From IMG/VR virus record IMGVR_UViG_3300037258_000590, positions 62,001 to 126,000 of that record: a DNA stretch of 64,000 nucleotides. One strand, 5' to 3'. The position numbers and the translations under genes were made by a program. Of this stretch, positions 5,540 through 19,394 are shown piece after piece (positions within the stretch are counted from its first letter, which is position 1; each line of letters begins with the position of its first letter). A model generated the notes under the pieces. That model ran no database searches. It saw only the letters and a list, made by a program, of their open reading frames with translations, and was not told the DNA's origin.

Positions 5540-5613
5540 AGGGGCGAGCCACACTGGCTCGGCGGCCGGTCTCCAACACCGGCAAAATGGGGGTTCGATT
5601 CCCTCCGCCCCTG
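5540..5613 (+). tRNA. tRNA-Trp(CCA)
   Basis: Cloverleaf; loop CT CCA AC; GGTTCGATTCC T-arm. Confidence 0.8.
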
Positions 5614-5920
5614 CGACCGTCAGCAAAGGCGAGAGCCCGCGCAGGCGCAGTCATAGCGGCCAGCTCGCTGGCCATTGACAAGACCATAGCGTGAGCATCC
5701 CCGGCGGGCCTTCCCCTTTGCGCCCGCCGGAAGGGCGAGGACAGCCGATCCTCGTCACGCGGGCTGTAACAGCTCGCAACGTGCGGTCCCGGCCCAGGCG
5801 GTTGTTGCTAGCCGCTGAGCCGGGACCTGCACGCCAGATGCTGCCCGGGGGTAGCCTAAGTGAGAGGCGTCCCGGAAATAAACGGGATAGTTCCAGGCGG
5901 AAACCCTGGTCCCCGGGCTT
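5614..5920 (+). ncRNA. Unassigned structured RNA with 3' tRNA-shaped domain
   Basis: Nested helices (ggccagc/gctggcc, ccggcgggc/gcccgccgg, gtcccggc/gccgggac) and a cloverleaf at 5843-5918 with non-canonical loops. Confidence 0.45.
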
Positions 5921-5925
5921 GGTAT

Positions 5926-5997
5926 GGGGCCTTGGCGCAGTGGTAGCGCATCTGCATGGCATGCAGAGGGTCAGGAGTTCAAATCTCCTAGGCTCCA
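5926..5997 (+). tRNA. tRNA-Ala(GGC)
   Basis: Cloverleaf; loop AT GGC AT. Confidence 0.9.
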
Positions 5998-6133
5998 CGA
6001 GGGTAACCCCCTTGAGGACGAGATGCGGTCCTCGCGCCCGGAGGCGGTTTCAGGCTAAACGTCCGGGGCGAAGCTGCTGATCCCCGGCTGGATCACCCTG
6101 AAGGACCGGCCGGTCCTGTACGCAGCGCACCAT

Positions 6134-6205
6134 GGGGTTGTAGCTCAGCGGTAGAGCAGCCGGCCCGCAACCGGCAGGTCCGCGGTTCAAATCCGCGTAA
6201 CTCCA
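6134..6205 (+). tRNA. tRNA-Ala(CGC)
   Basis: Cloverleaf; loop CC CGC AA (C33). Confidence 0.9.
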
Positions 6206-6375
6206 CGACCTGGGAGATCCTGGTCCGGATCCAGGCTCCTGCATTACCGTGCCAGCTGGCGATCGGCAGCTGGCGCCCGGAAAGGCCGCCGGGCAGGGAC
6301 GCGAGGATGTAGCTCAACGGGCAGAGCGCCCAGGATCAGGTTTTCCCGGGAAACCAGGAATTGCCGTAAGAATAG

Positions 6376-6449
6376 CGGGGCATGGCGCAGCTTGGCAGCG
6401 CGCTTCGTTCGGGACGAAGAGGCCACAGGTTCAAATCCTGTTGCCCCGA
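6376..6449 (+). tRNA. tRNA-Pro(CGG)
   Basis: Cloverleaf; loop TT CGG GA. Confidence 0.92.
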
Positions 6450-6583
6450 CTAGGTACGGCGTGCAGGCAAAGACCTGTTCGCGGCATGTGCCCTTATAGT
6501 GCGGACCCGGCTCATTACCGGGACACCGCGGGCACCCCTTGCTGGAGAGGGAGCTGACTGAAATCCAGTGCCATACCTAAAAA

Positions 6584-6656
6584 CGGGCCGTGGCCTAGTG
6601 GCTATGGCGCCTGCCTGGGGGGCAGGAGGACGCCGGTTCGAGTCCGGCCGGCCCGA
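6584..6656 (+). tRNA. tRNA-Pro(GGG)
   Basis: Cloverleaf; loop CT GGG GG. Confidence 0.9.
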
Positions 6657-6744
6657 CTCTGACGTGTGCCGGCTCAAGGGCAGCGGACATGAAGGGCCTC
6701 CTCGCTCTGCCAGCACACTCCGGCGGGACGAAGCGCAGGAGATA

Positions 6745-6816
6745 CGGGGTGTGGTGTAGGGGTAAGCGTGCCTGGTCTGGAACCAGGAGGGTGAGGTTCG
6801 AGTCCTCGCACCCCGA
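6745..6816 (+). tRNA. tRNA-Pro(TGG)
   Basis: Cloverleaf; loop TC TGG AA (C33). Confidence 0.85.
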
Positions 6817-6828
6817 CGAAATGCACGC

Positions 6829-6901
6829 GGGTTCCTAGCTGAGATGGATTAGCACCCGGCTGAAAACCAGGAGCAGGAAGGTTCGATACCTTCGGAACCC
6901 A
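6829..6901 (+). tRNA. tRNA-Phe(GAA)
   Basis: Cloverleaf; loop CT GAA AA. Confidence 0.88.
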
Positions 6902-7087
6902 CAACGGCATGACGCTGGCGGCGGCTATGAAACCGTCGTCGGTGACTGAGCGAGTAGCGCTCCGCCCGGTAAGCTGGCCCTGCCGGCAGGGCTGATCTCA
7001 TGCCGCCCGGGAACGGGCCTGGTCACACCTGCGGTCAGCCTCGCAAAGGCGCTTCAGGTCCCTGGCACCAGGTGGTTCCCGGGGCCT

Positions 7088-7159
7088 GCGGGTGTGGCCT
7101 AGTGGCTCGGGCATCAGCCTTCCAAGCTGACCACGCGAGTTCGATTCTCGCCACCCGCT
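7088..7159 (+). tRNA. tRNA-Gly(TCC)
   Basis: Cloverleaf; loop CT TCC AA. Confidence 0.92.
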
Positions 7160-7175
7160 CTATGACCGTAAACAT

Positions 7176-7247
7176 GCGCCGCTAACTCAGTGGCAGAGAG
7201 TCCGACTCTTAATCGGAAGGTCCGGGGTTCGATTCCCTGGCGGCGCA
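7176..7247 (+). tRNA. tRNA-Lys(CTT)
   Basis: Cloverleaf; loop CT CTT AA. Confidence 0.92.
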
Positions 7248-7250
7248 CGA

Positions 7251-7523
7251 ATGGCGGTGATGACGACGGACCGCACAGAAGAACAGGCCGCTGCCGAAGT
7301 GGCCGCCGCGAACGCAGCCAGCATCCTGATTGGCTGGTCACCATGCCGGGCCACCTGCCCGCACTGCGGCTTGCGGGGAACGGCCGAAGTCCGGCAGTGC
7401 TACCGGGTCCAGCCGCCTGGTTCGTTCTCCCTGGCGGGCGTGCAGGTCAAGTTCCCGGCCCGGCTCGGCTGGGAATTCCGGTGCGGCATCTGCGGCGTAT
7501 CTGGCTCCGCCGCGCCGAAATAA
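7251..7523 (+). CDS. Small Zn-ribbon protein between tRNA genes
   Basis: CPHC...CGIC pairs; ORF fills the gap between two tRNAs. Confidence 0.6.
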   Translation: MAVMTTDRTEEQAAAEVAAANAASILIGWSPCRATCPHCGLRGTAEVRQCYRVQPPGSFSLAGVQVKFPARLGWEFRCGICGVSGSAAPK

Positions 7524-7528
7524 ACCCT

Positions 7529-7601
7529 GGGCTCGTAGTCCAACTGGCAGAGCAGCGCTTTCAAACGGCGTACAGTGCGGGTTCGAATCCCGCCGGGCCC
7601 A
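7529..7601 (+). tRNA. tRNA-Leu(CAA), short variable loop
   Basis: Stem GCGCT/GGCGT, loop TT CAA AC, variable ACAGT. Confidence 0.75.
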
Positions 7602-7606
7602 CTCAA

Positions 7607-7679
7607 TGCGGTATGGCGCAACTGGCAGCGCGTCCGGCTCTGACCCGGAAGGCTCCTGGTTCGAATCCAGGTGCCGCAG
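7607..7679 (+). tRNA. tRNA-Gln(CTG)
   Basis: Cloverleaf; loop CT CTG AC. Confidence 0.92.
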
Positions 7680-7703
7680 CTACGCGTCATCTGACGCAAA
7701 CTC

Positions 7704-7772
7704 GCCGCCGCGCGCTGGCCGCGGCCTCGCTTTCGTAAGGCGGGAGGCCCGGTTCGACACCGGGGGGCGGCT
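7704..7772 (+). tRNA. tRNA-Thr(CGT), degenerate D-arm (possible pseudo-tRNA)
   Basis: GCCGCC/GGCGGC acceptor, loop TT CGT AA, T-arm intact, D-arm reduced. Confidence 0.5.
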
Positions 7773-7856
7773 CGATCGTCGACAGCTGCTGTTGCAGGTT
7801 ACAGGCCTAACCGGCAGTAAAAGCCCAGGTCAGCGAAAACGGTTGCCGCCGTGCAT

Positions 7857-7930
7857 GTCCTCGTAGCCCAACGGCAGGAGGCACCAGGTCGAGAATCTGG
7901 ACAGTGCGGGTTCAAATCCCGCCGGGGACA
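7857..7930 (+). tRNA. tRNA-Leu(GAG), short variable loop
   Basis: Loop TC GAG AA (C33), variable ACAGT. Confidence 0.85.
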
Positions 7931-8112
7931 CGCTCAGGTCAAGATGGCCAGCAGCATGAGCAGGCACACCGCGGCTGACTCGGCGACCCCGGTGCGGGAA
8001 CCGTCCCTGATGGCCAGGGCCAGCGCTGACCCGGCGGCCAGGGACGCGACGATCAGCACGGCGCCTATTACCGGCAGCCAGCGTGGTGATCCTGGTGCAG
8101 GCAGCGAACCCT

Positions 8113-8185
8113 GCCGCCTTAGCTCATCTGGCAGAGCAGCGGCCCTGTAAGCCGCGGGTAGCCCGTTCGAACCGGGCAGGCGGCT
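8113..8185 (+). tRNA. tRNA-Thr(TGT)
   Basis: Loop CC TGT AA (C33). Confidence 0.88.
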
Positions 8186-8383
8186 CTGACGGCCGGTTCC
8201 GGCGCGCGGCGGCACGTACACCGGGACGTCCAGGCCGAACCGGCCGCAAGCCTGGTGCAGGGCCCGGTAGTTTCCGCCGGCCGGCCGCAGGCCCAGCGTC
8301 TGCAGCGCCTCGGCGATAGACCGGCTCTGGCGGACCGCCCGGGTGACGGCCGCGCGGTCGCGCAGGATGCTCTGTACTGGCAT
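8186..8383 (-). pseudogene. Remnant resembling the N-terminal DNA-binding part of actinobacterial HNH endonucleases
   Basis: AVRQSRSIAEALQTLGLRPAGGNYRALHQAC..FGLD; no HNH core; the frame runs on antisense through tRNA-Thr. Confidence 0.4.
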
Positions 8384-8419
8384 ACGGCAACGGTACGGCG
8401 GCTGGGCTGCCAGTTCCAG

Positions 8420-8491
8420 TGGGGTGTGGGGTAACCGGCAGCCCGGAGAGTTTTGGTCTCTCTTGTCCAGGTTCGAATCCTGGCACCTCAG
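8420..8491 (+). tRNA. tRNA-Gln(TTG)
   Basis: Loop TT TTG GT. Confidence 0.9.
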
Positions 8492-8605
8492 CAAGGCTGT
8501 CCCAGACACTCAGCGGCAGCCATCCAGTTGCCAGGTAACTGCCCGGTCAGCCGGGCGCTTGACGGTTAATTGTCAGTTAATCGCACTTAATTGCTAGTCA
8601 CGTGT

Positions 8606-8679
8606 GCCTCCGTAGCTCTAGCGGATAGAGCGCCTGCTCGGTACGCAGGAGGTCCCGAGTTCGAATCTCGGTGGAGGCT
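8606..8679 (+). tRNA. tRNA-Thr(GGT)
   Basis: Loop TC GGT AC (C33). Confidence 0.9.
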
Positions 8680-8808
8680 CTGAGCGATGCGCCTCGCTCG
8701 CAAAACCAGGGCGCGGGGTGCGGCTGGTCCTCTCAAAACCAGTTCTTGCCCGCTCTGCGGAGCGGATGTGCGGTGTAAGCCCCGGCCTTGATCCTGCCGG
8801 GCAGCCAT

Positions 8809-8881
8809 GCGGACGTAGCGCAGCTGGTAGCGCGTTACCTTGCCAAGGTAAAGGCCGCGGGTTCGAGACCCGTCGTCCGCT
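8809..8881 (+). tRNA. tRNA-Gly(GCC)
   Basis: Loop TT GCC AA. Confidence 0.95.
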
Positions 8882-8915
8882 CGGCCCCGGCCTGGTGAAT
8901 GCAGGCAGGGCTCAT

Positions 8916-8989
8916 GTCCAGGTAGCCCAACGGCAGGAGGCACTGCGCTCAGACCGCAGGATGTGCGGGTTCGAATCCCGCCTTGGACA
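8916..8989 (+). tRNA. tRNA-Leu(CAG), short variable loop
   Basis: Loop CT CAG AC, variable GATGT. Confidence 0.85.
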
Positions 8990-9061
8990 CGATGGCGCTG
9001 GAAGGATCACGGCCGCGGGGTCTGCGCGTACCTGGCGGTTCGCCTGCCTTCCCCCATCCTC

Positions 9062-9147
9062 GGAGCATTGGCACAGCGGCAACTGCAGCGCCCTGCTAAG
9101 GCGTACGCCAGGTGACTGGTGCGGAGGTTCGAGTCCTCCATGCTCCG
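9062..9147 (+). tRNA. tRNA-Ser(GCT)
   Basis: Loop CT GCT AA, long variable arm. Confidence 0.92.
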
Positions 9148-9154
9148 CGAACCA

Positions 9155-9239
9155 GGAGGATTCGCCTAGTGGCTTATGGCGCACGCCCGGAAAGCGTGTT
9201 GGGGTAACACCCTCGCAGGTTCAAATCCTGCATCCTCCG
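9155..9239 (+). tRNA. tRNA-Ser(GGA)
   Basis: Loop CC GGA AA (C33), long variable arm. Confidence 0.92.
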
Positions 9240-9247
9240 CTCCCGGC

Positions 9248-9626
9248 CGGAGGCAAGTAACTATCCGGAGTCTCTTGATTCCAGCCCGTAGTTGGAGCTA
9301 TGTTGGCCTTGGGACGTTGGTGAACACTTGGGCTTCAAACGCAGGGAGCTGTCGTGCTGGTGAAAGCCTGCTACGCGGACCTCGGCCCTGCGTGAGAGGA
9401 ACTGGGGTTCGGCGACACGTGAATGGTCAGTCGGTGACTGGCGCTTGTTGTGGGTCTTGAGGTACCCGTAAGCCGCCGGGGAGCCAGACGGGACCGCGGC
9501 CCCTGAAGGGCAGCATGCGACGCGGAACCAGAGGCACCCAGACAGGAGGCATACCCGCCGTCTTCCCGGCAGCGGGTCACTGCCCAGCCAAAGGAACAGC
9601 AATCCCCGGCGCAGGGTCCTCACCCA
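9248..9626 (+). ncRNA. Unassigned ~380-nt structured RNA candidate
   Basis: acgcaggg/ccctgcgt, GG-TGAAAG-CC loop, gtcagtc/gactggc, long-range cgccgggga/tccccggcg; no convincing CDS. Confidence 0.4.
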
Positions 9627-9711
9627 GGAGGATTCGCCTAGTGGCCTATGGCGCCGGCTTTGAATCCCGGTTGGGGTGACACCCTCGCAGGTTCAAATCC
9701 TGCATCCTCCG
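9627..9711 (+). tRNA. tRNA-Ser(TGA)
   Basis: Loop TT TGA AT; near-identical to Ser(GGA) outside the anticodon arm. Confidence 0.88.
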
Positions 9712-9724
9712 CTCGCATCACCCA

Positions 9725-9814
9725 GGAGGGGTAAGCCGAGCTGCGGCCTATCGGCACTTGTCCCGAAAACAAGCTGGGAGCAATCCCGTGTGGGTTCGAG
9801 ACCCACCTCCTCCG
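9725..9814 (+). tRNA. tRNA-Ser(CGA)
   Basis: Loop CC CGA AA (C33), long variable arm. Confidence 0.85.
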
Positions 9815-9951
9815 CGTAATATCCTGATTTCTGCGGGGCGTCCTATAGGCAACGCCGCTCAGACGGTAACAGCGCGGTCGTGCGACCCCCTGAGCAGGCC
9901 AGCCAGCAGGCCGCAGCGAGACTGGCCCCCGCGGTGTACTCGCTTCATCCT

Positions 9952-10025
9952 GGGCCGGCAGCACAGTCGGTTCGTGCAGCTGCCTGATACGCAGACGGGC
10001 GCTGGTTCAATTCCAGCCCGGCCCA
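9952..10025 (+). tRNA. tRNA-Ile(GAT)
   Basis: Loop CT GAT AC. Confidence 0.88.
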
Positions 10026-10031
10026 CTACAC

Positions 10032-10105
10032 GGCGGTATAGCTCAGTCCGGCAGAGCGATCCCCCCATAAGGGAGAGGCCGGTGGATCGAAGCCACCTAC
10101 CGCTA
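10032..10105 (+). tRNA. tRNA-CAT (elongator Met, or Ile2)
   Basis: Loop CC CAT AA (C33); T-loop ATCGAAG. Confidence 0.8.
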
Positions 10106-10115
10106 CGCAGTTCCC

Positions 10116-10190
10116 GGGCCAGTGGCCAATATGGTGACGGCGCCCGTCTTATATACGGGAAATGTGCAGGTTCAACCCCTGCCTGGCCCA
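10116..10190 (+). tRNA. tRNA-Ile(TAT)
   Basis: Stem CCCGT/ACGGG, loop CT TAT AT; GGGCCAG/CTGGCCC acceptor, A73. Confidence 0.82.
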
Positions 10191-10241
10191 CGAAAGGAAT
10201 TTCCGTGAACGCTAAACGACCCCTGCGAATATGACTCGCAG

Positions 10242-10314
10242 GAGCCGGTAGCTCAGCGGTATGAGCGGCGGGCCTTTAACCCGCGCGACCTGGGTTCGAA
10301 TCCCAGCCGGCCCA
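10242..10314 (+). tRNA. tRNA-Lys(TTT)
   Basis: Loop CC TTT AA (C33). Confidence 0.88.
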
Positions 10315-10321
10315 CGATCAC

Positions 10322-10395
10322 GCGCTGGTAGCTCAGCTGGACAGAGCGACCGTCTTCTAAGCGGCAGGCCCAGGGTTCGAATCCCTGCCGGCGCA
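10322..10395 (+). tRNA. tRNA-Arg(TCT)
   Basis: Loop CT TCT AA. Confidence 0.92.
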
Positions 10396-10482
10396 CATGA
10401 ACGGCCGCGCTAAAAGACGGCCCGGTGGAACGGGGCACGTGACCCTGGACTCACAGCGAGCGTCCGTCAAGCGCGAGCACAC

Positions 10483-10555
10483 GCTCCGTTGGAGTAACGG
10501 ACATCTCACCTGGCCCTCAACCAGGAGACTGCCGGTTCGATCCCGGCACGGAGCA
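10483..10555 (+). tRNA. tRNA-Glu(CTC)
   Basis: Loop CC CTC AA (C33). Confidence 0.9.
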
Positions 10556-10566
10556 CGCAGTAACCA

Positions 10567-10639
10567 GGCCCCATGGAGCTACTGGCTAAGCCACCGGTCT
10601 TTCACACCGGAGAAGACGGGTCGGAACCGTCTGGGGTCA
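10567..10639 (+). tRNA. tRNA-Glu(TTC), atypical T-loop
   Basis: Loop CT TTC AC; T-loop GTCGGAA. Confidence 0.75.
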
Positions 10640-10640
10640 C

Positions 10641-10714
10641 TGCGGGGTGCAGCAGTTAGGTAGCTGACTGGGCTCATAATCCAGAAGACGCGGGTTCAAA
10701 TCCCGCCCCCGCTA
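10641..10714 (+). tRNA. Initiator-like tRNA-fMet(CAT)
   Basis: 1-72 mismatch, GCGGGG acceptor, CTGGG CTCATAA TCCAG anticodon arm. Confidence 0.85.
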
Positions 10715-10718
10715 CTAT

Positions 10719-10789
10719 TCTGGTATCCGTTAACGGTAAACGAGCAGACTGTTAATCTGTCCCTCCTGGTTCGAATCCAGGTACCAGAG
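10719..10789 (+). tRNA. tRNA-Asn(GTT)
   Basis: Loop CT GTT AA. Confidence 0.88.
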
Positions 10790-10865
10790 CGAGGTGCCGC
10801 AAGCCGCTGCACGAAACCGCCACGTGGCCTCATACGGCGGGGAATTGCCCTTTCGCAGCACCCTA

Positions 10866-10942
10866 GGTGACGTAGCACAACCGGCCAGTGCCCCACCCTG
10901 TCACGGTGGATTGTGCGGGTTCGAATCCCGTCGTCATCGCCA
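10866..10942 (+). tRNA. tRNA-Asp(GTC) with encoded CCA
   Basis: Loop CT GTC AC. Confidence 0.92.
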
Positions 10943-10950
10943 GCAATCAG

Positions 10951-11270
10951 GCCGGGTGCAGCCTGCCGCGGATCGTCGCGTGCGCACCCTGACAGCGGGT
11001 GCCGGCGGCGGCAGAGCGGTCTTACGGCTGCACCCGGCCCTCACCAGGTAAGAGCCGCTCACGGCCCGGACCTGACACACGAACGCAAGACTCAGGGCGG
11101 CTGGTTACGCGATCGCACCCTGACATCCGGAACTGGCCGGAACGATCAACCTGAGTGACCGGCCCGAGACGGCGGCGCCATTCCCAGGGATTAAGCGGGA
11201 CAGCTTTCCCGGACCGCGTAAAGCACAGACCGCATTCCGGCCCCAGCAGGCATTGCACACGCCGGAAGCT
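10951..11270 (+). ncRNA. Unassigned structured RNA candidate with possible pseudoknot
   Basis: 13-bp stem gccgggtgcagcc/ggctgcacccggc; internal gagcggtcttac is complementary to downstream gtaagagccgctc. Confidence 0.4.
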
Positions 11271-11277
11271 TACATAC

Positions 11278-11349
11278 GGGCGGCTGGCGCAGCGGCAGCG
11301 CGCTACCCCGACACGGTAGAGGCCACTGGTTCAAATCCAGTGCCGCCCA
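11278..11349 (+). tRNA. tRNA-Val(GAC)
   Basis: Loop CC GAC AC (C33). Confidence 0.92.
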
Positions 11350-11361
11350 CGTAGTATCCAT

Positions 11362-11434
11362 GCGCCCGCAGCACGACGGATCGTGCAGACGGCTACGAAC
11401 CGGAAGGGTGGGAGTTCGAATCTCTCCGGGCGCG
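11362..11434 (+). tRNA. tRNA-Arg(ACG)
   Basis: Loop CT ACG AA. Confidence 0.88.
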
Positions 11435-11445
11435 CGTAATACCAA

Positions 11446-11517
11446 GGGCGGTTGGCGCAGCGGCAGCGCGGCTCGTTCACACCGAGTAGGCCGCAGGTTC
11501 GATCCCTGCACCGCCCA
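11446..11517 (+). tRNA. tRNA-Val(CAC)
   Basis: Loop TT CAC AC. Confidence 0.92.
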
Positions 11518-11591
11518 CTAGCTGACGAGAAGCAGGATTGCGGTCGCGACGGCGACCAGGGGTCCGAGTCCCCGTTCTCGTCAGCCCACAT

Positions 11592-11665
11592 GGCGGCCGA
11601 AGCCAAACAGGCTGAGGCACTGGACTGTGAATCCAGGTAAGCGGGTTCAAGTCCCGCCGGTCGCC
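11592..11665 (+). tRNA. tRNA-His(GTG)
   Basis: G-1/C73, loop CT GTG AA. Confidence 0.92.
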
Positions 11666-11669
11666 CCGC

Positions 11670-11750
11670 GGGTCGTTGGCAGAGCGGACGATTGCGCCTG
11701 GCTGTAAACCAGGTTCTCCGGACACGGTGGTTCAAATCCATCACGGCCCA
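11670..11750 (+). tRNA. tRNA-Tyr(GTA)
   Basis: Loop CT GTA AA, variable arm. Confidence 0.92.
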
Positions 11751-11764
11751 CGTAACCCGGTGGC

Positions 11765-12007
11765 ATGATGGCTGTCGTGGATATCACGATCATGTACCGC
11801 AAAGACGCCGACCACCCGCAGCACGGCGGCAGCGGCGGTGAGGAGTGGCGCATCGAAGCCGTAGGCATCGAAGGCTATGACGGCGACCGGTGCGTTCAGG
11901 CTGTGCTGGATGCGGGCGCGCTGATGAAATCCGCCGCGTACGGAAATGCGCGGTTGATCGTGGAAGGGCTGCGCGGCGCCAGCCCGGATGCTGTGGCAGG
12001 TGCATGA
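11765..12007 (+). CDS. Hypothetical protein
   Basis: 80-aa ORF in tRNA-array gap. Confidence 0.45.
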   Translation: MMAVVDITIMYRKDADHPQHGGSGGEEWRIEAVGIEGYDGDRCVQAVLDAGALMKSAAYGNARLIVEGLRGASPDAVAGA

Positions 12008-12086
12008 ATGCGCACCGGCCTGGGACTGCTGGCAAGTCTGCAGCCGGAAGCCCAGGCCCTGCCGTTAGCACAGCACGTATGGCAGG

Positions 12087-12353
12087 ATGACCCGCATGGA
12101 ACTGACGCAGCTGGCCCCGCCGGGCCACGGGCTTATCTCCAAGCTGACCGCTGACGATGGCGATTTCCGGGTTACCTGGGATCCCGGCAACCCGGAGGAG
12201 ACCGAGAACGCCCGGCAGGCTTTCGCTGACCTGCGCCGCAGCGGGTACGCAATCCACCGGGTGGAAGGCGGGCGCCGGGAGGTGATCCGTGAGTTCGATC
12301 CGGCGGCCGGAGCCATGCAGCTCGTGGCGCACCGGCCGAACCGCGGCGGCTTA
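12087..12353 (+). CDS. Small phage protein apparently ending in Gly-Gly; expected stop reads TTA
   Basis: ...RVTWDPGNPEE...EVIREFDPAAGAMQLVAHRPNRGG then TTA TC ATG of the next gene; the frame stays open to 12845. Confidence 0.5.
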
Positions 12354-12355
12354 TC

Positions 12356-12985
12356 ATGCCCGCGGGAGAGTTCCGGTACTGCCGTGATCCGGAAGCTGCG
12401 TGGCTGGCCAGCGGCAACAGCATGCCCGCAAGTACGGACCCGGCAACCAGGTTCTTCACGTGGTCTGCTGCTGGTTCCGGTGTCATCTGCACGACCGGGA
12501 ATACCGCATCCGGTACGGTTATCGTTTACAGCCCGGACGGGAGTGCAGGCCTGTGGTACGGCACGTTCCCTTCCGGCCCTGGCTCAGGACTACCGCAGGC
12601 ACAGATTGAGCAGCTGGTCGCGGAACACCAGCGCGAGGCGGAAAAAGCTGCCGCGCGCCGCCAGGTCGCTGATGCCAGGGCGCACCAGTTGCTGCTGTCC
12701 CTGCTCGATGAAATCCAGGCAGCGGATTACGCGCAGCATGGCTGGTTCGAGCTGCGCGGCTCGGCAGGCGGCTGGTGGCGCATCCGCGGAGCCGGCCAGG
12801 CGGGGAACGTTGATGAACTGGAAGCTTCAGGCGGCGAGCGGATAGCGTCCTGGTGCTGTCATCCGCCAGGCGCCCTGCCGGACGCTGACGCGTACATCGC
12901 CCAGATGCTGCACCTGGCTGCTGACGAGCCTGGGTTCCGGGCCGCCGGCAACAGGACCGGGCGGCGCCAGCCTGCCGCAGCGTGA
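12356..12985 (+). CDS. Hypothetical phage protein
   Basis: RAHQLLLSLL...FELRGSAGGWWRI...CCHPPGALPDAD..AQMLHL..DEPGF. Confidence 0.6.
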   Translation: MPAGEFRYCRDPEAAWLASGNSMPASTDPATRFFTWSAAGSGVICTTGNTASGTVIVYSPDGSAGLWYGTFPSGPGSGLPQAQIEQLVAEHQREAEKAAARRQVADARAHQLLLSLLDEIQAADYAQHGWFELRGSAGGWWRIRGAGQAGNVDELEASGGERIASWCCHPPGALPDADAYIAQMLHLAADEPGFRAAGNRTGRRQPAAA

Positions 12986-12989
12986 TCTA

Positions 12990-13061
12990 GCGCCTATCGT
13001 CCAACGGACAGGGCTCTGGCCCCCGAAGCCAGCGATGCAGGTTCGAATCCTGCTGGGCGCG
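12990..13061 (+). tRNA. tRNA-Arg(CCG)
   Basis: Loop CC CCG AA (C33). Confidence 0.9.
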
Positions 13062-13134
13062 CTGGTACCCCGTGAAGCCTCGTGCTAGCTGCGGGCTCCG
13101 CGTGAACGCCCCGCTGCTGAACGGGGTACCTCCT

Positions 13135-13207
13135 GGCGGCATGGCTGAACGGACAGGCCCGCGTCTGCAAAACGTGCGCTAACCCGGTTCGACTCCGGGT
13201 GCCGCTT
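13135..13207 (+). tRNA. tRNA-Cys(GCA)
   Basis: Loop CT GCA AA, U73. Confidence 0.9.
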
Positions 13208-13211
13208 CTGA

Positions 13212-13284
13212 TGGCTCGTAGTCCAGCGGACGAGGGCACCGGCCTCCTAAGCCGGGGGCGCGGGTTCGATTCCCGCCGGGCCAG
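13212..13284 (+). tRNA. tRNA-Arg(CCT)
   Basis: Loop CT CCT AA. Confidence 0.9.
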
Positions 13285-13322
13285 CAATTCCAGGGCGCTC
13301 ACGCTATGATCGTGGTTCCGTA

Positions 13323-13401
13323 CCTTCCCGGTGCGCTAGCTGGCGGTTACTTCATCATTCTGGATGCGAATCGTGCCGCTGGCGTCTCGATCTCGGGGAG
13401 G
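13323..13401 (+). ncRNA. Y RNA-like 1 (short, no tRNA domain)
   Basis: Terminal helix ccttcccg/cggggagg; shared CGGTGCG...GGTTACTTC...GATCTCGG motifs; upstream of Ro60. Confidence 0.65.
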
Positions 13402-13419
13402 ACTGACCGCGAAACAGTG

Positions 13420-13561
13420 TCTTCCGGTGCGCAGGCAAGCGGGTACTTCGCTGACCATCCAATTTCAGCGGGTAGCTCAGTGGCAGAGCACTCGGCTGAG
13501 CCGAGAGGTCGCGGGTTCGAATCCCGCCCTACGTCCCGCCGCCGATCTTGATCTCGGAAGA
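13420..13561 (+). ncRNA. Y RNA-like 2 (tRNA domain in canonical D-anticodon-T order)
   Basis: tcttccg/cggaaga terminal helix, CGGTGCGCAGG...TTGATCTCGG; internal TAGCTCAGTGGCAGAGC, 5-nt-loop arm and GGGTTCGAATCCC. Confidence 0.75.
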
Positions 13562-13587
13562 ATGCGCGTACAACTGAATACTCCGCA

Positions 13588-13700
13588 CCTCCCGGTGCGA
13601 TTGCTGCGGGTTACTTCGTGGTTCGATTCCGCGCAGTCAGCTTGCCTGGCTGCTGCCCGACTGGCTTGGGCTATCCTGCAGCGCCTTTGACCTCGGGAGG
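13588..13700 (+). ncRNA. Y RNA-like 3 (YrlA-type permuted T-AS-D)
   Basis: cctcccg/cgggagg helix; GGTTCGATTCC T-arm, closed acceptor-like hairpin, D-like arm. Confidence 0.7.
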
Positions 13701-13715
13701 AGCACGCGTCACGGC

Positions 13716-13844
13716 GTGCCCGGTGCGCAGGTGAGGAGTTCTTCTCCTGTTAGAGAAAGATGCGGGTTCGAATCCCGCCGCGGCTCCGGCCGTGTAGCTC
13801 AATGGCAGAGCATCTGACCGCCTCGCCGACCTGATCTCGGGCAC
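13716..13844 (+). ncRNA. Y RNA-like 4 (YrlA-type permuted T-AS-D)
   Basis: gtgcccg/cgggcac helix; GCGGGTTCGAATCCCGC, then cgcggc-tccg-gccgtg, then TAGCTCAATGGCAGAGC. Confidence 0.8.
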
Positions 13845-13897
13845 TATCCGTGACGCCCGCTCCTCCTGCCAGCACAGCAAGCGAGAGGAGCATTTTC

Positions 13898-15577
13898 ATG
13901 TCCAGGTACAACACCCCGGCAGCCAAGGCTGCTGTGCGCAGCCCGGTCACGTCAGAAGCCACCCCGAGCGGCCAGACGTACGAAGGCGCACCCGGGTACG
14001 CGCGTGACGCTCGCGGCGAGCTTTTCCTTTTGTCGGTCGCCTACATGGGCGCGGATGGCGCATTCTACGAAACCAGCACCCAGCGCGATACCCGGTTCGC
14101 GAACCTGGTCCGCCAGGTCGCTGTCGAAGACCCGGCATGGATGGCGGGTTTCGTCCCGTGGCTGCGCAACGGCGCGCACATGCGCACCGCGTCGGTGGTC
14201 GCCGCGGCCGAGGCGCTGCAGGCCATGCTCGCCGCCGGGCTGCCGGGCGGCCGGGCGCTCATCTCCGCAGCGCTCCAGCGGGCTGATGAGCCGGGTGAGC
14301 TGCTGGCCTACTGGCACGGCCGGTACGGGCGCAATGAGCCCAAGCCGCTCAAGCGCGGCATCGCCGACGCGATCGTCCGGTTGTACTCGGAGTTCAGCCT
14401 GCTTCGCTATGACACGGACTCGCACGGCTACCGGTTCGGCGACGTAATCGAACGCGTTCACGTCACCGGGGAGCACCCGGAGGTCAAGGGCACCTGGCGG
14501 GGTGCGCTGTACGGGCACGCCATCGACCGGCGCCACGGCCGGGACAACCCGGTGCCAGGCGAGCTGCGGATGGTCGGCGCGAACGCCATCCTGCGGGTGC
14601 GGGCCGCGAGAGACCCATCCGTCCTGCTTAACACAGGCGCGCTGCGGGCTGCCGGCATGACATGGGAAGACACCTTGTCGCTGGCCGGGAGCCGGGTGGA
14701 CAAGGCGAAGCTGTGGTCCGCGCTGATCCCGTCGATGAGCTTCATGGCGTGCTTGCGCAATCTGCGCAACTTCGATGAGGCCGGCGTCCCGGACGAGGTG
14801 ACGGCAACCGTGGCGGCCCGGCTGAGCGATCCGGAGCAGGTCGCGAAGTCCCGGCAGTTCCCGTTCCGGTTCCTGGCCGCGTACCGGGCGGCGCCGTCGC
14901 TACGCTGGGCCTACCCGCTGGAGCAAGCACTCAACTTGTCGCTGGCGAACGTGCCAGCATTGCCGGGCCGCACGCTGGTCCTGGTCGACCGGTCCCTGTC
15001 CATGTGGAGCGCGAAGATGAGCACCCATTCGGACATGCCGTGGGCTGATGCTGCGGCCATCTTCGGCGCGGCCGTGGCTAGCCGTGCCGCGCACGCCGAC
15101 CTGGCGGAATTTTCCAGCCGCTCCGCGCGGATCGAATTCAGCCGCGCCGAATCCGTGCTGCGGATCATCGGGCGGTTTCACGCCGGCGACAGTCCAGGCA
15201 GCATCATCGGGACCGGGACAGACATCCCGCGTGCCGTTCGCGATAACCTGCGCCCGGATCACGCTCGGGTGGTGATCGTCACCGATGAGCAGAGCGAGCC
15301 AGGCATCCTGCCGTCCAACATCTACGGCGGCTACAGCAGCGACGCGATGCCGCCTACCCGGATCGATGATCTCATTCCGGCCTCTGTGCCGGTGTACCTG
15401 TGGAACATCGGCGGCTACAAGCGCGGTGTTCTCCCTTCAGGAAGCGGTAGCCGGCACACGTTCGGCGGCCTGACCGATTCCGCCTTCGAGATGATCAGCT
15501 TGCTCGAAGCACGACGGGACGCGCACTGGCCGTGGGCACCGGCGCTGCTCGCGGATCACAGCCGCGGCAGCGTCTGA
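13898..15577 (+). CDS. Ro60-like TROVE-domain RNA-binding protein with C-terminal VWA
   Basis: GAGGAG RBS; ARDARGELFLL, DTRFANLVRQVAVEDP, GAHMRTASVV, MACLRNLRNF, SRQFPFRFLAAY, VLVDRSLSM, IVTDEQ. Confidence 0.9.
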   Translation: MSRYNTPAAKAAVRSPVTSEATPSGQTYEGAPGYARDARGELFLLSVAYMGADGAFYETSTQRDTRFANLVRQVAVEDPAWMAGFVPWLRNGAHMRTASVVAAAEALQAMLAAGLPGGRALISAALQRADEPGELLAYWHGRYGRNEPKPLKRGIADAIVRLYSEFSLLRYDTDSHGYRFGDVIERVHVTGEHPEVKGTWRGALYGHAIDRRHGRDNPVPGELRMVGANAILRVRAARDPSVLLNTGALRAAGMTWEDTLSLAGSRVDKAKLWSALIPSMSFMACLRNLRNFDEAGVPDEVTATVAARLSDPEQVAKSRQFPFRFLAAYRAAPSLRWAYPLEQALNLSLANVPALPGRTLVLVDRSLSMWSAKMSTHSDMPWADAAAIFGAAVASRAAHADLAEFSSRSARIEFSRAESVLRIIGRFHAGDSPGSIIGTGTDIPRAVRDNLRPDHARVVIVTDEQSEPGILPSNIYGGYSSDAMPPTRIDDLIPASVPVYLWNIGGYKRGVLPSGSGSRHTFGGLTDSAFEMISLLEARRDAHWPWAPALLADHSRGSV

Positions 15578-17196: not shown

Positions 17197-19394
17197 TCAG
17201 GCTCTAGGCCGGAACAGGGCCTCGTAAGCCGCCGCCCAGTCGCGCCAGTGATCTTCGATCAGGTACCGGCAGGCCATATCCCGGGCCGCCTCGCCCATAG
17301 TAACCCGCAAGTCATTATCGGCGGCGAGGAGGCTCATGTACTTAAGCCATTCATGGTCTTGCTTTACCAGGAACCCGTTGACGCCGTGCTCGATGACCGG
17401 GCGGTAGGCCTCGCAGTCGCTTGCGATCGCCGGGATCCCGCGAGCCCCGTACTCAATCGCTTTGATCGCGCTATTGTGGCTGTATATTCCGGCGGCTGAG
17501 AACGCTTCGCCGTCTACCTGGATGTCTACCGGGCAGACTATCCACGGCTCTACGACGGCGATCTCGTCTTCCCAGCGGATCGGCTGTATCATATTGCAGC
17601 CGCGAGGATCACGAACCCTGTCTGTGGCGTGGAGCAACACGGCGCGCTTCCGCTCGGAAAGGAATCCGACGCGTGCGGCGAACAGCCGGGTCTCATTCAG
17701 CCGCAGCCAGACTTGCCAGTAGACACGATCGGCATACGATGACCGCTGGGGCCCCCGGCAGGCCCGGACAACAGACGGGATGCCGATGCTCCACAGCAGC
17801 CGCTGCACGTCCCGGGCCAGATCTTCGCTCTTACTGGCCAGGCTGACTGCCGATTTAGTTACGTGCCCGTCTGCCTCGAACAGCCCGGCCAGGAACGCTG
17901 TACGCACCGGGTGCGGACTGCGGAAAATCACATCCGGAACCCGCAGCGTACGCTCCCGCCGCTGGCCCAGCTTCGAATGCGGCCTCCCTGCACCGACCGC
18001 GCACAGAAACCGGGACAGATGCGCGCTGGCTACGCTGACCGACCGGCGCCGCAGCACCTCACCGTCCCAGGTCGTGACTGCTTCCGCGGTAGCCCGGAAC
18101 CCGGCGGCTTCCAGATCAGTGATCAGCGCCTTGATCAGGTCGCCGTCCTGGCCGTCACAGGAGAACTTAATCGCGGTCTTACCCGAGAAATTGCCGTCCC
18201 CTGTGAACAGGCCGAGGATACGACCCCAGGTTTCGGTAATGGCGACGGACGGCCCCTCGGCCACATCCAGGAATGCCATCGGATGCACAGCGCCGGAACG
18301 CGTAACCCGGCCGTCAGCCGGCCAGGGTACGCGACGGACAGGCAGCTCCGGGCATTCCTCCTGGACTAGCCGGAGCTTATCGCCACACCGCAAGTCCCGG
18401 GCTTGACGCCACGTCCCTCCGCTATCCATCAGGCGGTGTTCAGGCGTGACTGCGACCTGGAGTCCGCGAGCTGTAGTGATGCGCATTCCGGCCCGTTGCA
18501 GCTGATGTTCCACGGCACGCACTTCGCGCCAGCCGTCCAGCCAGACGTTCATGCCTGCTTCGATCACGCCTGCTTCGATCACGCCTTGATCCGTCGAGAC
18601 TCGCATACTTGAATCTATGCATTTCGACTGATTGAAGGTGGTCGGCGCGAGCGGGCACAGGCCTATGTCGAAATCAATACTTACGTAGAACTCTTGCGGG
18701 TGCTGGTTGACCTGCATCCAGGGCACGTAGGACATCCGGTCTGCCGGAGCCTTGACGGTGGGCCGGTAGTCGGTGGCGTTGCACTGGAAGTCCCAGCCGG
18801 GAAAACGCCGCAGGAACCGGCGCACCGGATCGGCGACGATACCGATATCGACGCCGTGACTGGCCCCGCCCATCCAGCCGACCCGCGGGCGGGCACGCTC
18901 CAGCCTGGGCAGCGTGCACACCCAGCCTGGTATGCAGTTGGGCAGCACGGCAACCGCCGGGTTGTACTCGCGCATGACCTGGGCCAGCGGTTCGGTGCTC
19001 ACGGTCACCAGGTCGGCCGTCTGCGCGGCGTGCTCGATCGCGTCGCGGATGTCGGGGCGCCCGTACAGCGTATAAGCGTTCCAGTTGTCCGGCGTGACGT
19101 GGAATACATCGTCATCCAGCTCGAACACCAGCCGTGAGTGCGGGGTGCGGGCCCGCCGCCAGACAGGCAGGCCGTCATGCTTGTTCCAGCGCTGAGCCAC
19201 GATGACGTCGTAGCCCTGCAGGCTGGCCAGCGTGATGCGAGGCGGCGTGCCCGCCTGGTCTCCGGCATCGGCGAACGTGACCTCGAAGTCCGCATCGGAT
19301 TCGTCCTGGCACGCCAGCTCTTTGAGCGGCAGCTCCATGCGATACCAGGACAGGAGCACCCGGAGCCGCCGTCGTGTCCGGCGAAGATCTTCAC
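17197..19394 (-). CDS. GT-B (GT4-like) glycosyltransferase with intein; frameshift near 5' end
   Basis: FELDDD, VGWMGGASH, DIGLCPL..FNQSK|intein|SAIKAIEYGARGIPAIASD; N-terminus MKIFAGHDGGSGC lies in another frame owing to a TCCTG duplication at 19346-19355. Confidence 0.8.
17473..18621 (-). mobile_element. Intein with LAGLIDADG endonuclease in glycosyltransferase (383 aa)
   Basis: CIDSS start, TPEHRL block B, LGLFTGDG and FLAGLFEADG, ends SHN with Ser+1. Confidence 0.92.

What the first reader, a model, noticed from the sequence alone, without database searches (positions are those of the whole stretch)
13323..15577. Four tandem, architecturally distinct Y RNAs upstream of a phage Ro60/TROVE gene
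Seen: four units share a terminal helix CGGTGCG.../...GA(T/C)CTCGG and a G(T)TACTTC-like loop. Unit 1 has no tRNA domain. Unit 2 holds D, 5-nt-loop and T arms in normal order. Units 3 and 4 have the permuted T-arm, closed acceptor, D-arm layout. Known: bacterial Ro60 (Rsr) binds Y RNAs, YrlA RNAs are permuted tRNA mimics, and the RNP acts in RNA decay and stress responses, often near RtcB. Inference: a diversified set of Ro60 adaptors or decoys tied to the phage tRNA pool; unit 2 may be a captured-tRNA intermediate in YrlA evolution.
Basis: partly seen in the sequence, partly recalled or inferred. Interest (0 to 1): 0.85.

Follow-up and report, generated by a model that had tools for sequence, protein, structure and literature searches.

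The report
Four-gene Y RNA array beside phage Ro60
A large actinobacterial phage carries four different small Y RNA genes in a row in front of its Ro60 gene; this kind of RNA-protein pair is already known, but one of the four belongs to a tRNA-like design seen so far only in phages.

Summary
A covariance model built from short units of other phages finds exactly four hits in the 64-kb window: U1 13323-13401, U2 13419-13562, U3 13587-13701 and U4 13715-13845. All lie on the strand of a TROVE/Ro60 gene (13898-15577). The same scaffold recurs 130 times beside Ro60 in 50 phage loci. It also occurs beside Ro60 in actinomycete chromosomes, and it shows strong covariation. These are therefore Y RNAs of the actinobacterial YrlA/YrlB kind, which is a known kind.

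What differs between units is the insert. U1 is a plain hairpin. U4 is a permuted tRNA mimic (YrlA-like). U3 is a reduced permuted mimic with a 7-bp closed acceptor. U2 is a normal-order D/anticodon/T tRNA-like domain. I found U2's class in six phage contigs and in none of 80 bacterial loci.

A -10-like box precedes only the first unit. A terminator-like hairpin containing the Ro60 ribosome-binding site follows the last. This suggests one precursor transcript.

The "captured-tRNA intermediate" idea is not supported, and the decoy idea is untested. Expression and Ro60 binding are inferred, not shown.

The parts
13305..13310 (+). -10-like box TATGAT. Putative promoter of the Y RNA array, with a predicted start a few bases before U1.
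   Evidence: A TAnnnT box lies 9-24 nt upstream of 38 of 63 first units of arrays and of 0 of 67 internal units. The E. coli-type promoter scan found nothing. This is an inference.
13323..13401 (+). U1: hairpin-type Y RNA (YrlB-like). It has the scaffold only, plus a small apical hairpin.
   Evidence: R1 69.2 bits. Aligned with 24 short units from other phages. Scaffold covariation.
13419..13562 (+). U2: Y scaffold holding an extra hairpin (13450-13469) and a normal-order tRNA-like domain. The domain has a D arm (13475-13489), an anticodon-like arm with a 3-5 nt loop (13491-13505), an AGGUC variable loop and a T arm (13511-13527). The acceptor is only 2 bp.
   Evidence: R1 41 bits. Rfam tRNA 46.5 bits at model positions 6-65. 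Not called by ARAGORN. Consensus fold with three homologous units shows 17 compensatory pairs.
13587..13701 (+). U3: Y scaffold with a T arm directly after ACUU (13617-13633), a 7-bp closed acceptor-like stem (13634-13652) and a degenerate D arm GCCC/GGGC (13655-13671). It has no variable loop and no anticodon-like hairpin.
   Evidence: R1 32.7 bits. MFE z = -2.7. The same layout occurs in L011 2704-2826 and L031 2574-2693, with compensatory changes in the 7-bp stem.
13715..13845 (+). U4: YrlA-like permuted tRNA mimic. In order: short anticodon-like hairpin with a 6-nt loop (13744-13753), AGA (13754-13756) pairing with UCU (13813-15), variable loop AAGAU, T arm (13762-13778), closed 6-bp acceptor (13779-13794), D arm (13797-13811).
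   Evidence: R1 34.2 bits. Rfam YrlA 44.2 bits at model positions 23-88, below the cut-off of 69. 32-sequence alignment A6: 94% of cells paired and 139 double-change cells. Levitt pair G15:C48 or A15:U48 in 32 of 32 sequences.
13859..13897 (+). Terminator-like hairpin GCUCCUC...GAGGAGC followed by AUUUUC. Its 3' arm is the Shine-Dalgarno sequence of Ro60.
   Evidence: Fold -20.8 kcal/mol, z = -2.1. Relatives have a hairpin at the same place with different, complementary arm sequences. More distant phages have a separate terminator and SD. Function is inferred.
13898..15577 (+). Ro60/TROVE protein gene (559 aa).
   Evidence: Pfam TROVE 3e-18. PHROG 850 at 2e-39. Thermus phage phiLo Ro60 structures 9KOP/9L5Y at E=1e-21, with the DxSxS MIDAS motif aligned. 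Best GenBank phage match is 47% identical and annotated Ro-like RNA-binding protein.
5540..13285 (+). Cluster of 39 tRNA genes on the same strand, ending 38 nt before U1.
   Evidence: ARAGORN and Rfam.

Best explanation
This is an operon-like array of four Y RNA genes serving the phage's own Ro60.

Shown by sequence comparison:
- Each unit has the same scaffold. It has a 7-8 bp terminal helix and a conserved bulged helix (5' GGUGCG / 3' GAUCUC), which is the counterpart of the metazoan GGUCCGA Ro60 site. Next come an inner stem that differs between units but stays complementary, and a GUUAC(UUC) hinge.
- Each unit carries a different insert at the hinge: a plain hairpin (U1), a normal-order tRNA-like domain (U2), a reduced permuted tRNA-like domain (U3), and a full permuted YrlA-type tRNA mimic (U4).

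Inferred:
- The array is transcribed from a promoter just before U1 as one precursor and cut into four RNAs. This would match M. smegmatis YrlA/YrlB, which come from a single precursor.
- A terminator-like hairpin after U4 sequesters the Ro60 ribosome-binding site. Ro60 would then be made only from read-through transcripts, in lower amount than the RNAs.
- Each RNA binds Ro60 through the shared site and presents a different module. This would give several RNPs that gate the Ro60 cavity or tether it to different partners. Candidate partners are host PNPase, as shown for Deinococcus, Salmonella and Thermus phage phiLo, or proteins that recognise the tRNA elbow. The likely purpose is remodelling of RNA decay or tRNA surveillance during infection.
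For: - R1 finds exactly four hits in the window. It finds 130 hits in 50 phage Ro60 loci, all on the Ro60 strand, and 78 hits in 42 bacterial Ro60 loci.
- Scaffold covariation on A2: 88% paired against 35-53% in slid controls, and 502 double-change cells. U10-A200 swaps to A-U in 11 sequences and G9.U201 becomes A-U in 18.
- The putative Ro site is 96.6% identical within an array and 83.8% between arrays. The neighbouring stem columns are about 49% and 44%. This fits binding to one cognate protein.
- One phage unit carries the literal metazoan GGUCCG.
- tRNA-like fold of the U4 class: T, D and anticodon-stem pairs covary, and the Levitt pair covaries in 32 of 32 sequences.
- A -10-like box occurs only before first units. 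The terminator/SD hairpin is conserved in structure.
- Literature. Chen 2014 reports YrlA near Ro60 in 254 bacteria and 22 phages, and M. smegmatis YrlA plus YrlB from one precursor, both Ro-bound (PMC4201824). Phage phiLo Ro60 binds two upstream Y-like RNAs and host PNPase (PMC12135203).
Against: - There are no expression or binding data for this phage. Everything after 'the sequences exist and covary' is by analogy.
- No unit reaches the Rfam gathering score for YrlA or YrlB.
- The published bacterial motif GNCGAAN0-1G is absent.
- The U-tract after the hairpin is only four U's, so termination is uncertain.
- The partners of the four modules are unknown.
- No RNA-repair gene lies next to Ro60 here.
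Confidence: 0.8

Rival explanations
1. The four units are mainly a structured 5' leader of the Ro60 mRNA. Ro60 binds its own leader and, together with the SD-sequestering hairpin, autoregulates its translation. The units would not act as free RNAs.
For: The units are on the same strand and immediately upstream of Ro60, with no recognisable promoter between U4 and Ro60. The Ro60 SD lies inside a conserved hairpin. Only the first unit has a -10-like box.
Against: In several phages the arrays lie 1-3 kb downstream of Ro60 (Atuin, L029, L049) or are separated from it by another gene (Kela RNA ligase). More distant relatives have a clear terminator and then a separate SD. Characterised bacterial and phage Y RNAs are discrete RNAs (PMC4201824, PMC12135203).
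Confidence: 0.08
2. The tRNA-like modules work independently of Ro60 as decoys or sensors for host tRNA-targeting factors such as anticodon nucleases, tRNA-modifying enzymes or toxins. The link to Ro60 would be secondary.
For: The array directly follows 39 tRNA genes. In the U4 class the small hairpin usually has a 7-nt loop with the anticodon-loop signature: C32 in 28 of 35, U33 in 31, purine 37 in 33 and A38 in 31. Bacterial relatives also show it (52 of 65).
Against: The Ro-site motif is the most strictly kept part of every unit and is array-specific. U1-type units with no tRNA part are the commonest class. In this window U4's loop has 6 nt and U2's has 3-5 nt, so the anticodon mimicry is poorest here. 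The loops of the U2 class are not conserved.
Confidence: 0.08
3. The units are decayed tRNA genes or duplicated debris at the end of a tRNA cluster and have no function.
For: The T and D arms resemble those of neighbouring tRNAs. GenBank annotators and ARAGORN call some such units tRNAs.
Against: There is compensatory covariation in every helix across more than 100 units. The non-tRNA scaffold is conserved. The units are syntenic with Ro60 in phages and bacteria. R1 finds no comparable hit elsewhere in the window.
Confidence: 0.02

Closest known systems
Actinobacterial YrlA/YrlB Y RNAs (M. smegmatis; Chen et al. 2014, PMC4201824; Rfam RF02553 and RF02565)
   Same: - Encoded just upstream of Ro60 on the same strand, with several in tandem from one precursor.
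- One long hairpin type and one type with T arm, closed acceptor and D arm.
- A YUAY hinge, which here is GUUAC.
- The ACUUC motif is visible in the published M. smegmatis probe sequences.
- The same R1 scaffold is found in 42 actinomycete chromosomal Ro60 loci.
   Different: - There are four units rather than two or three.
- No unit reaches the Rfam gathering score.
- The Ro-site motif is GGUGCG rather than GNCGAA.
- U2's normal-order class was not seen in 80 bacterial loci.
Thermus phage phiLo Ro60 with Yrl1 and Yrl2 (PMC12135203; PDB 9KOP, 9L5Y)
   Same: It is a phage Ro60 gene with tandem Y-like RNAs upstream, and the window's protein is its homologue (E=1e-21). That system was shown to bind its RNAs and host PNPase.
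   Different: phiLo has two RNAs defined by a CGAA bulge, and the paper does not describe tRNA-like domains in them. Here there are four RNAs, three of them with tRNA-like modules.
Salmonella Typhimurium YrlA (crystal structure 6CU1; bioRxiv 10.1101/312249)
   Same: It is a permuted tRNA mimic with the T arm 5' of the D arm and a closed acceptor. It keeps tRNA tertiary pairs, including the Levitt pair, which is also kept in the U4 class.
   Different: Salmonella YrlA lacks an anticodon loop. The actinobacterial and phage U4 class keeps a 2-bp stem and a usually 7-nt anticodon-like loop stacked on the 3-bp anticodon-stem pairing.
Deinococcus radiodurans Yrn1
   Same: According to Chen 2014, its D-like element precedes the T arm and an anticodon-like arm with a 6-nt loop lies between them. 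This is the same orientation as U2.
   Different: Yrn1 has no full D arm and no variable loop. U2 has a canonical D arm, an AGGUC variable loop and a T arm. Homology was not tested because no Yrn1 sequence was on hand.

Membership tests
Bacterial/phage Y RNA (Ro60-associated ncRNA) | Encoded within about 4 kb of a Ro60/TROVE gene on the same strand (criterion of Chen 2014) | tested here: met
   The units lie at 13323-13845 and Ro60 at 13898-15577, both on the + strand.
Bacterial/phage Y RNA (Ro60-associated ncRNA) | The 5' and 3' ends pair into a stem that carries a conserved Ro60-binding helix | tested here: met
   The terminal helix and the bulged helix G8-C204, G9.U201, U10-A200, G11 bulge, C12-G199 are supported by covariation. 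The motif is array-specific.
Bacterial/phage Y RNA (Ro60-associated ncRNA) | Literal published motif GNCGAAN0-1G (bacteria) or GGUCCGA (metazoa) in the 5' strand | tested here: not met
   All four units have GGUGCG, one mismatch from GGUCCG. A related phage unit has GGUCCG.
Bacterial/phage Y RNA (Ro60-associated ncRNA) | Physical association with Ro60 and dependence on it for stability | not testable with these tools
   Needs RIP, EMSA or Northern blots.
YrlA (Rfam RF02553) | Score at or above the Rfam gathering cut-off (69 bits) | tested here: not met
   U4 scores 44.2 bits as a local match to positions 23-88. U1-U3 give no YrlA hit.
YrlA (Rfam RF02553) | T arm, then closed acceptor-like stem, then D arm, enclosed by an anticodon-stem pairing | tested here: met
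   U4 meets this fully and U3 in reduced form. The anticodon-stem pairing covaries, whereas the alternative pairing with UUC does not. U1 and U2 do not have this layout.
YrlA (Rfam RF02553) | tRNA tertiary-interaction nucleotides (U8:A14, R15:Y48, G18G19, T-loop) | tested here: met
   U4 class: U8:A14 in 32 of 32, G15:C48 in 22 or A15:U48 in 10, GG in 25 of 32. Read from the sequence, U4 has A15:U48 and U2 has G15:C48.
YrlB (Rfam RF02565) | Score at or above the Rfam gathering cut-off (97 bits) | tested here: not met
   U1 scores 15 bits, E=7. It is YrlB-like only in being a hairpin Y RNA without a tRNA domain.
tRNA (RF00005), considered for U2 | 7-bp acceptor stem with free ends and a 7-nt anticodon loop | tested here: not met
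   The model match covers positions 6-65 only. Two acceptor pairs remain and the anticodon loop is 3-5 nt. ARAGORN does not call it.
Ro60/TROVE protein | TROVE domain plus a vWA-type module with a DxSxS MIDAS motif | tested here: met
   Pfam TROVE 66.6 bits against a cut-off of 23. Alignment to phiLo Ro60 includes LVDRSLSM against LVDVSGSM.

The most novel reading that the evidence does not exclude
Actinophages may keep a modular, rapidly diversifying library of Ro60-docked tRNA mimics. It would include a phage-specific class in which a normal-order tRNA body is grafted into the Y scaffold. In this reading the library acts as decoys or sensors for host tRNA-targeting defences, or recruits tRNA-handling enzymes, to protect the phage's own large tRNA set.
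Probability: 0.15. Interest if true: 0.8.

Novelty: new variant of a known kind. Interest (0 to 1): 0.55.

Why it matters
Ro60 and Y RNAs are known in phages, but what the tRNA-like module does is still open. This locus and its relatives show three things:
- One Ro60 can be served by up to six Y RNAs that share a docking site but carry different modules.
- One module class, the normal-order tRNA body, appeared only in phages in this sample.
- The common YrlA-type class keeps an anticodon-loop-like hairpin, which fits the proposed origin from dimeric tRNA transcripts.

There is also a practical point. These units are currently annotated in GenBank phages as tRNAs or small proteins, or are left unannotated. 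Cultivable relatives such as Streptomyces phages pSt2308, GiJojo and BRock and Gordonia phage Neville offer a direct way to test what each module recruits.

Tried and rejected
- Megablast of the region against GenBank phages found nothing, so relatives had to be found through the protein.
- The Rfam gathering search named only tRNAs. The permissive search was needed.
- MAFFT plus RNAalifold on the short units recovered only the terminal helix. A column-pair scan on that alignment was uninformative because of G+C bias. The inner stem became testable only after realignment to the model.
- My D-arm regular expression fires constantly in G+C-rich coding DNA, so I used it only inside units.
- The loose scaffold regular expression has a high background of about 1.7 hits per locus on the wrong strand. 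I dropped it for counting units and used R1 hits instead, which undercount long units.
A tighter pattern worked, though four of its ten hits were coding-sequence chance matches.
- The E. coli-type promoter scan found no promoter.
- MAFFT alignment of mixed U3-like units was poor. Only L011 and L031 are clear U3 homologues.
- Two Y RNA reviews could not be read because they are not held.
- I considered pairing of the invariant UUC with the strand before the variable loop (a 5-bp local hairpin). I rejected it in favour of the tRNA-like 27-29:41-43 pairing because only the latter covaries.
Full report
**What the window is.** It is part of a 210-kb IMG/VR viral contig (IMGVR_UViG_3300037258_000590). 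It encodes a major head protein, a maturation protease, a portal and a large terminase. It also has 39 tRNA genes on the + strand between 5540 and 13285. No GenBank phage is close at the DNA level.

**The Ro60 gene.** The ORF at 13898-15577 is a Ro60/TROVE protein.
- Pfam TROVE scores 66.6 bits against a cut-off of 23, and PHROG 850 gives 2e-39.
- It matches the solved Ro60 of Thermus phage phiLo at E=1e-21, with the DxSxS MIDAS motif aligned.
- Its best GenBank phage relatives are 38-47% identical and annotated "Ro-like RNA binding protein". They come from Streptomyces, Arthrobacter and Gordonia phages.
- Chromosomal Ro60 genes of Streptosporangium, Planotetraspora, Nonomuraea, Micromonosporaceae and Streptomyces are 50-59% identical.

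**The observation.**
- I built a covariance model (R1) from 25 short hairpin-type units: U1 plus 24 from other phages.
- R1 finds exactly four hits in the 64 kb: 13323-13401, 13419-13562, 13587-13701 and 13715-13845. The E-values run from 5e-13 to 6e-5, and the next hit has E=0.46.
- The strict motif GRTGCG-N-TACTTC is found only at these four places.
- The permissive Rfam search supports the described contents. U2 matches the tRNA model over positions 6-65 (46.5 bits) with a shortened anticodon loop. U4 matches YrlA positions 23-88 (44.2 bits, below the cut-off of 69). U1 gives only a meaningless YrlB match (15 bits).

**The family.**
- Upstream of Ro60 in Streptomyces phage pSt2308 there are five units with the same motifs.
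- TACTTC occurs at 2.8 per kb in the 1 kb before Ro60 and at 0.19 per kb elsewhere.
- R1 finds 130 units in 50 phage Ro60 loci, all on the Ro60 strand, with one to six per locus. Eleven loci, counting the window, have four or more. In a few phages the array lies downstream of Ro60.
- R1 also finds 78 units in 42 actinomycete chromosomal Ro60 loci. The usual pattern is a 75-nt hairpin unit followed by a 140-nt YrlA-like unit just before Ro60, with at most three units.
- The window's RNAs therefore belong to the actinobacterial Y RNA family. That family is already described for M. smegmatis, where YrlA and YrlB are both Ro-bound and come from one precursor, and for 22 phages (PMC4201824).
- The oligonucleotide probes published for M. 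smegmatis YrlA and YrlB contain ACUUC. The GUUAC hinge corresponds to the conserved YUAY of that paper.

**The scaffold.** On the model-based alignment of the 130 units, a 19-pair structure is 88% paired. Slid controls give 35-53%. There are 502 cells with changes on both sides, and no shuffle out of 500 reaches the observed scores.
- Ten of the 19 pairs were in the model, so the alignment leans towards them. The other nine were not.
- Those nine include the bulged helix G9.U201 (A-U in 18 sequences), U10-A200 (swapped to A-U in 11), an unpaired G11 and C12-G199, and the inner-stem pairs 16-18/187-189 and 25/183.
- This bulged helix (5' GGUGCG / 3' GAUCUC) sits where the metazoan GGUCCGA/UUGACU Ro60 site sits. 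One phage unit has the literal GGUCCG.
- Its 12 positions are 96.6% identical between units of one array and 83.8% identical between arrays. The adjacent stem columns are about 49% and 44%. Units of one array have thus diverged almost everywhere except in an array-specific docking motif. This is what binding to one cognate protein predicts.
- Cognate 5' and 3' inner strands form more stable duplexes than non-cognate ones (-12.4 against -9.1 kcal/mol). For U1-U3, none of 20 non-cognate partners was as stable.

**The four modules.**
- **U1** is the plain hairpin class. This is the commonest class (74 of 130 units) and is usually first in an array.
- **U4** belongs to the YrlA-like class.
  - In a 32-sequence alignment of phage and bacterial members, the T, D, inner and terminal helices are 94% paired with 139 double-change cells.
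  - The Levitt pair is G15:C48 in 22 sequences and A15:U48 in 10, with no exception, and U8:A14 is invariant.
  - Two pairings compete for the three bases before the variable loop. The tRNA-like pairing with the strand after the D arm covaries (4, 11 and 11 double changes). Pairing with the invariant UUC does not, and it leaves 9-10 mismatched cells at two of its three pairs.
  - Stacked on that 3-bp pairing is a covarying 2-bp stem with a loop that is 7 nt in 35 of 54 parsed phage units. Its signature is C32 (28 of 35), U33 (31), purine 37 (33) and A38 (31). Bacterial members show the signature in 52 of 65.
  - This class therefore keeps a nearly complete cloverleaf, with the Y stem entering the 5' strand of the anticodon stem. 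Salmonella YrlA lacks an anticodon loop (bioRxiv 10.1101/312249).
  - The colinear anticodon arm, variable loop and T arm fit the proposal cited there that YrlA arose from a dimeric tRNA transcript.
  - In the window's own U4 the loop has 6 nt.
- **U3** is a reduced class. Its T arm starts inside ACUUC, it has no variable loop, its closed stem is exactly 7 bp, and its D arm is GCCC/GGGC. The same layout occurs in L011 and L031, with compensatory changes in the 7-bp stem. A 7-bp stem is what made M. smegmatis YrlA an RNase P substrate (PMC4201824). Cleavage of U3 is a testable possibility, not a result.
- **U2** is the unusual one. After the hinge come an extra hairpin, then a D arm, an anticodon-like arm, an AGGUC variable loop and a T arm in normal tRNA order, with only two acceptor pairs.
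  - The same design occurs in five other IMG/VR contigs (L144, L049, L029, L252, L256). All include the extra hairpin, with a similar loop (about ACCAACAAUU).
  - It occurs in none of 80 bacterial Ro60 loci scanned with the same pattern.
  - A consensus fold of four members has 17 pairs with compensatory changes.
  - In two members the embedded domain is complete enough to be called a tRNA: Phe-GAA at 61.7 bits and Thr-GGU by ARAGORN. Their acceptor stems nevertheless have only three or four good pairs.
  - The anticodon loops differ (7, 7, 6, 6, 7 and, in the window, 3-5 nt), so the loop seems unconstrained in this class.
  - U2's anticodon stem is identical to that of L049. U2 is no more similar to any of the phage's own tRNAs (best score 31) than to L049 or L144 (36 and 34).
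  - This argues against a recent capture and against a transitional intermediate. It looks like a maintained class that is phage-specific so far.
  - The D-before-T orientation recalls Deinococcus Yrn1 as described by Chen 2014. I could not test homology.

**Transcription signals (inferred).**
- A TAnnnT box lies 9-24 nt before 38 of 63 first units and before none of 67 internal units. In the window it is TATGAT at 13305-13310.
- After U4 a hairpin (13859-13891, -20.8 kcal/mol) is followed by AUUUUC and then the Ro60 AUG. Its 3' arm GAGGAGC is the Shine-Dalgarno sequence.
- Close relatives have a hairpin of different sequence but the same design. More distant phages have a clear terminator followed by a separate SD.
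- The simplest reading is one precursor for the four RNAs, with Ro60 translated only from read-through transcripts and from an occluded ribosome-binding site.

**Function.** Nothing here shows expression, processing or binding.
- By analogy with Deinococcus, Salmonella and phage phiLo, the RNAs should dock on Ro60 and tether or gate it (PMC4201824, PMC12135203).
- The four modules suggest four different RNPs.
- The idea that they protect or police the phage's tRNA pool is attractive, given the position next to 39 tRNAs and the anticodon-like loops. It remains untested.
- In this window no RtcB or RNA ligase is adjacent to Ro60. Kela has an RNA ligase gene between its array and Ro60.

**Novelty.** Y RNAs next to phage Ro60 genes, sometimes several, are published: 355 YrlA candidates in 276 genomes and two RNAs in phiLo. 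I found no paper that describes the arrays of actinophages, the normal-order class or the anticodon-loop signature. The library is incomplete, however, and two reviews could not be read. I rate the finding a new variant of a known kind, of moderate interest.

Noticed in passing
L003 2269-2343 (GiJojo gene 29); L005 2204-2275 (VanLee); L006 1963-2373 (Neville gp88-90): GenBank annotations appear to mislabel Y RNA units. GiJojo's tRNA-Arg(cct) and VanLee's only tRNA, Arg(tct), overlap YrlA-type units. Three small hypothetical CDSs of Neville lie over its array. ARAGORN makes similar tRNA calls in several IMG/VR arrays.
   Followed up: partly
window 17197-19359 (-): A 720-aa ORF combines glycosyltransferase group 1 matches with LAGLIDADG and Hom_end homing-endonuclease matches in the middle. 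It is probably an intein-containing glycosyltransferase.
   Followed up: no
window 48899-50185 (-): The protein matches PHROG 1211, 'adenylosuccinate synthetase' of the PurZ type (2e-71). This hints that the phage may replace adenine with 2-aminoadenine in its DNA.
   Followed up: no
window 33481-35133 (-): A transposase-like ORF (PHROG 506, 3e-47) sits close to the head-gene module. It may be an insertion sequence inside the phage genome.
   Followed up: no
window 45012-47819 (-): The large terminase ORF is unusually long (935 aa) and matches the terminase profile in two separate stretches. It may carry an insertion such as an intein.
   Followed up: no
window 13570-13579; spacers in L010, L011, L013, L031, L032: The spacer between units often contains ACAACUGAAU or a close variant. 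In the window it occurs exactly once, between U2 and U3. It could be a processing signal for cutting the precursor.
   Followed up: partly
window 9725-9815, 10032-10106, 10116-10191: ARAGORN makes some odd tRNA calls: a 91-nt tRNA-Ala(ggc) not found by Rfam, a tRNA-Tyr with anticodon AUA, and a tRNA-Ile with anticodon UAU.
   Followed up: no
L008 4579-4742 (phage BRock): There is a near-threshold match to the manA RNA motif (49.7 bits against a cut-off of 55.2) between tRNA genes downstream of Ro60.
   Followed up: no
L056 941-1083 (-); L054 around 5730: Low-G+C viral contigs also carry GUUACUUC-type units. One is a short T-acceptor-D unit followed by a hairpin unit. The scaffold therefore extends beyond high-G+C actinophages.
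   Followed up: no
L252 and L256, U2-class units: [quoted passage not shown] The two structures are mutually exclusive.
   Followed up: no
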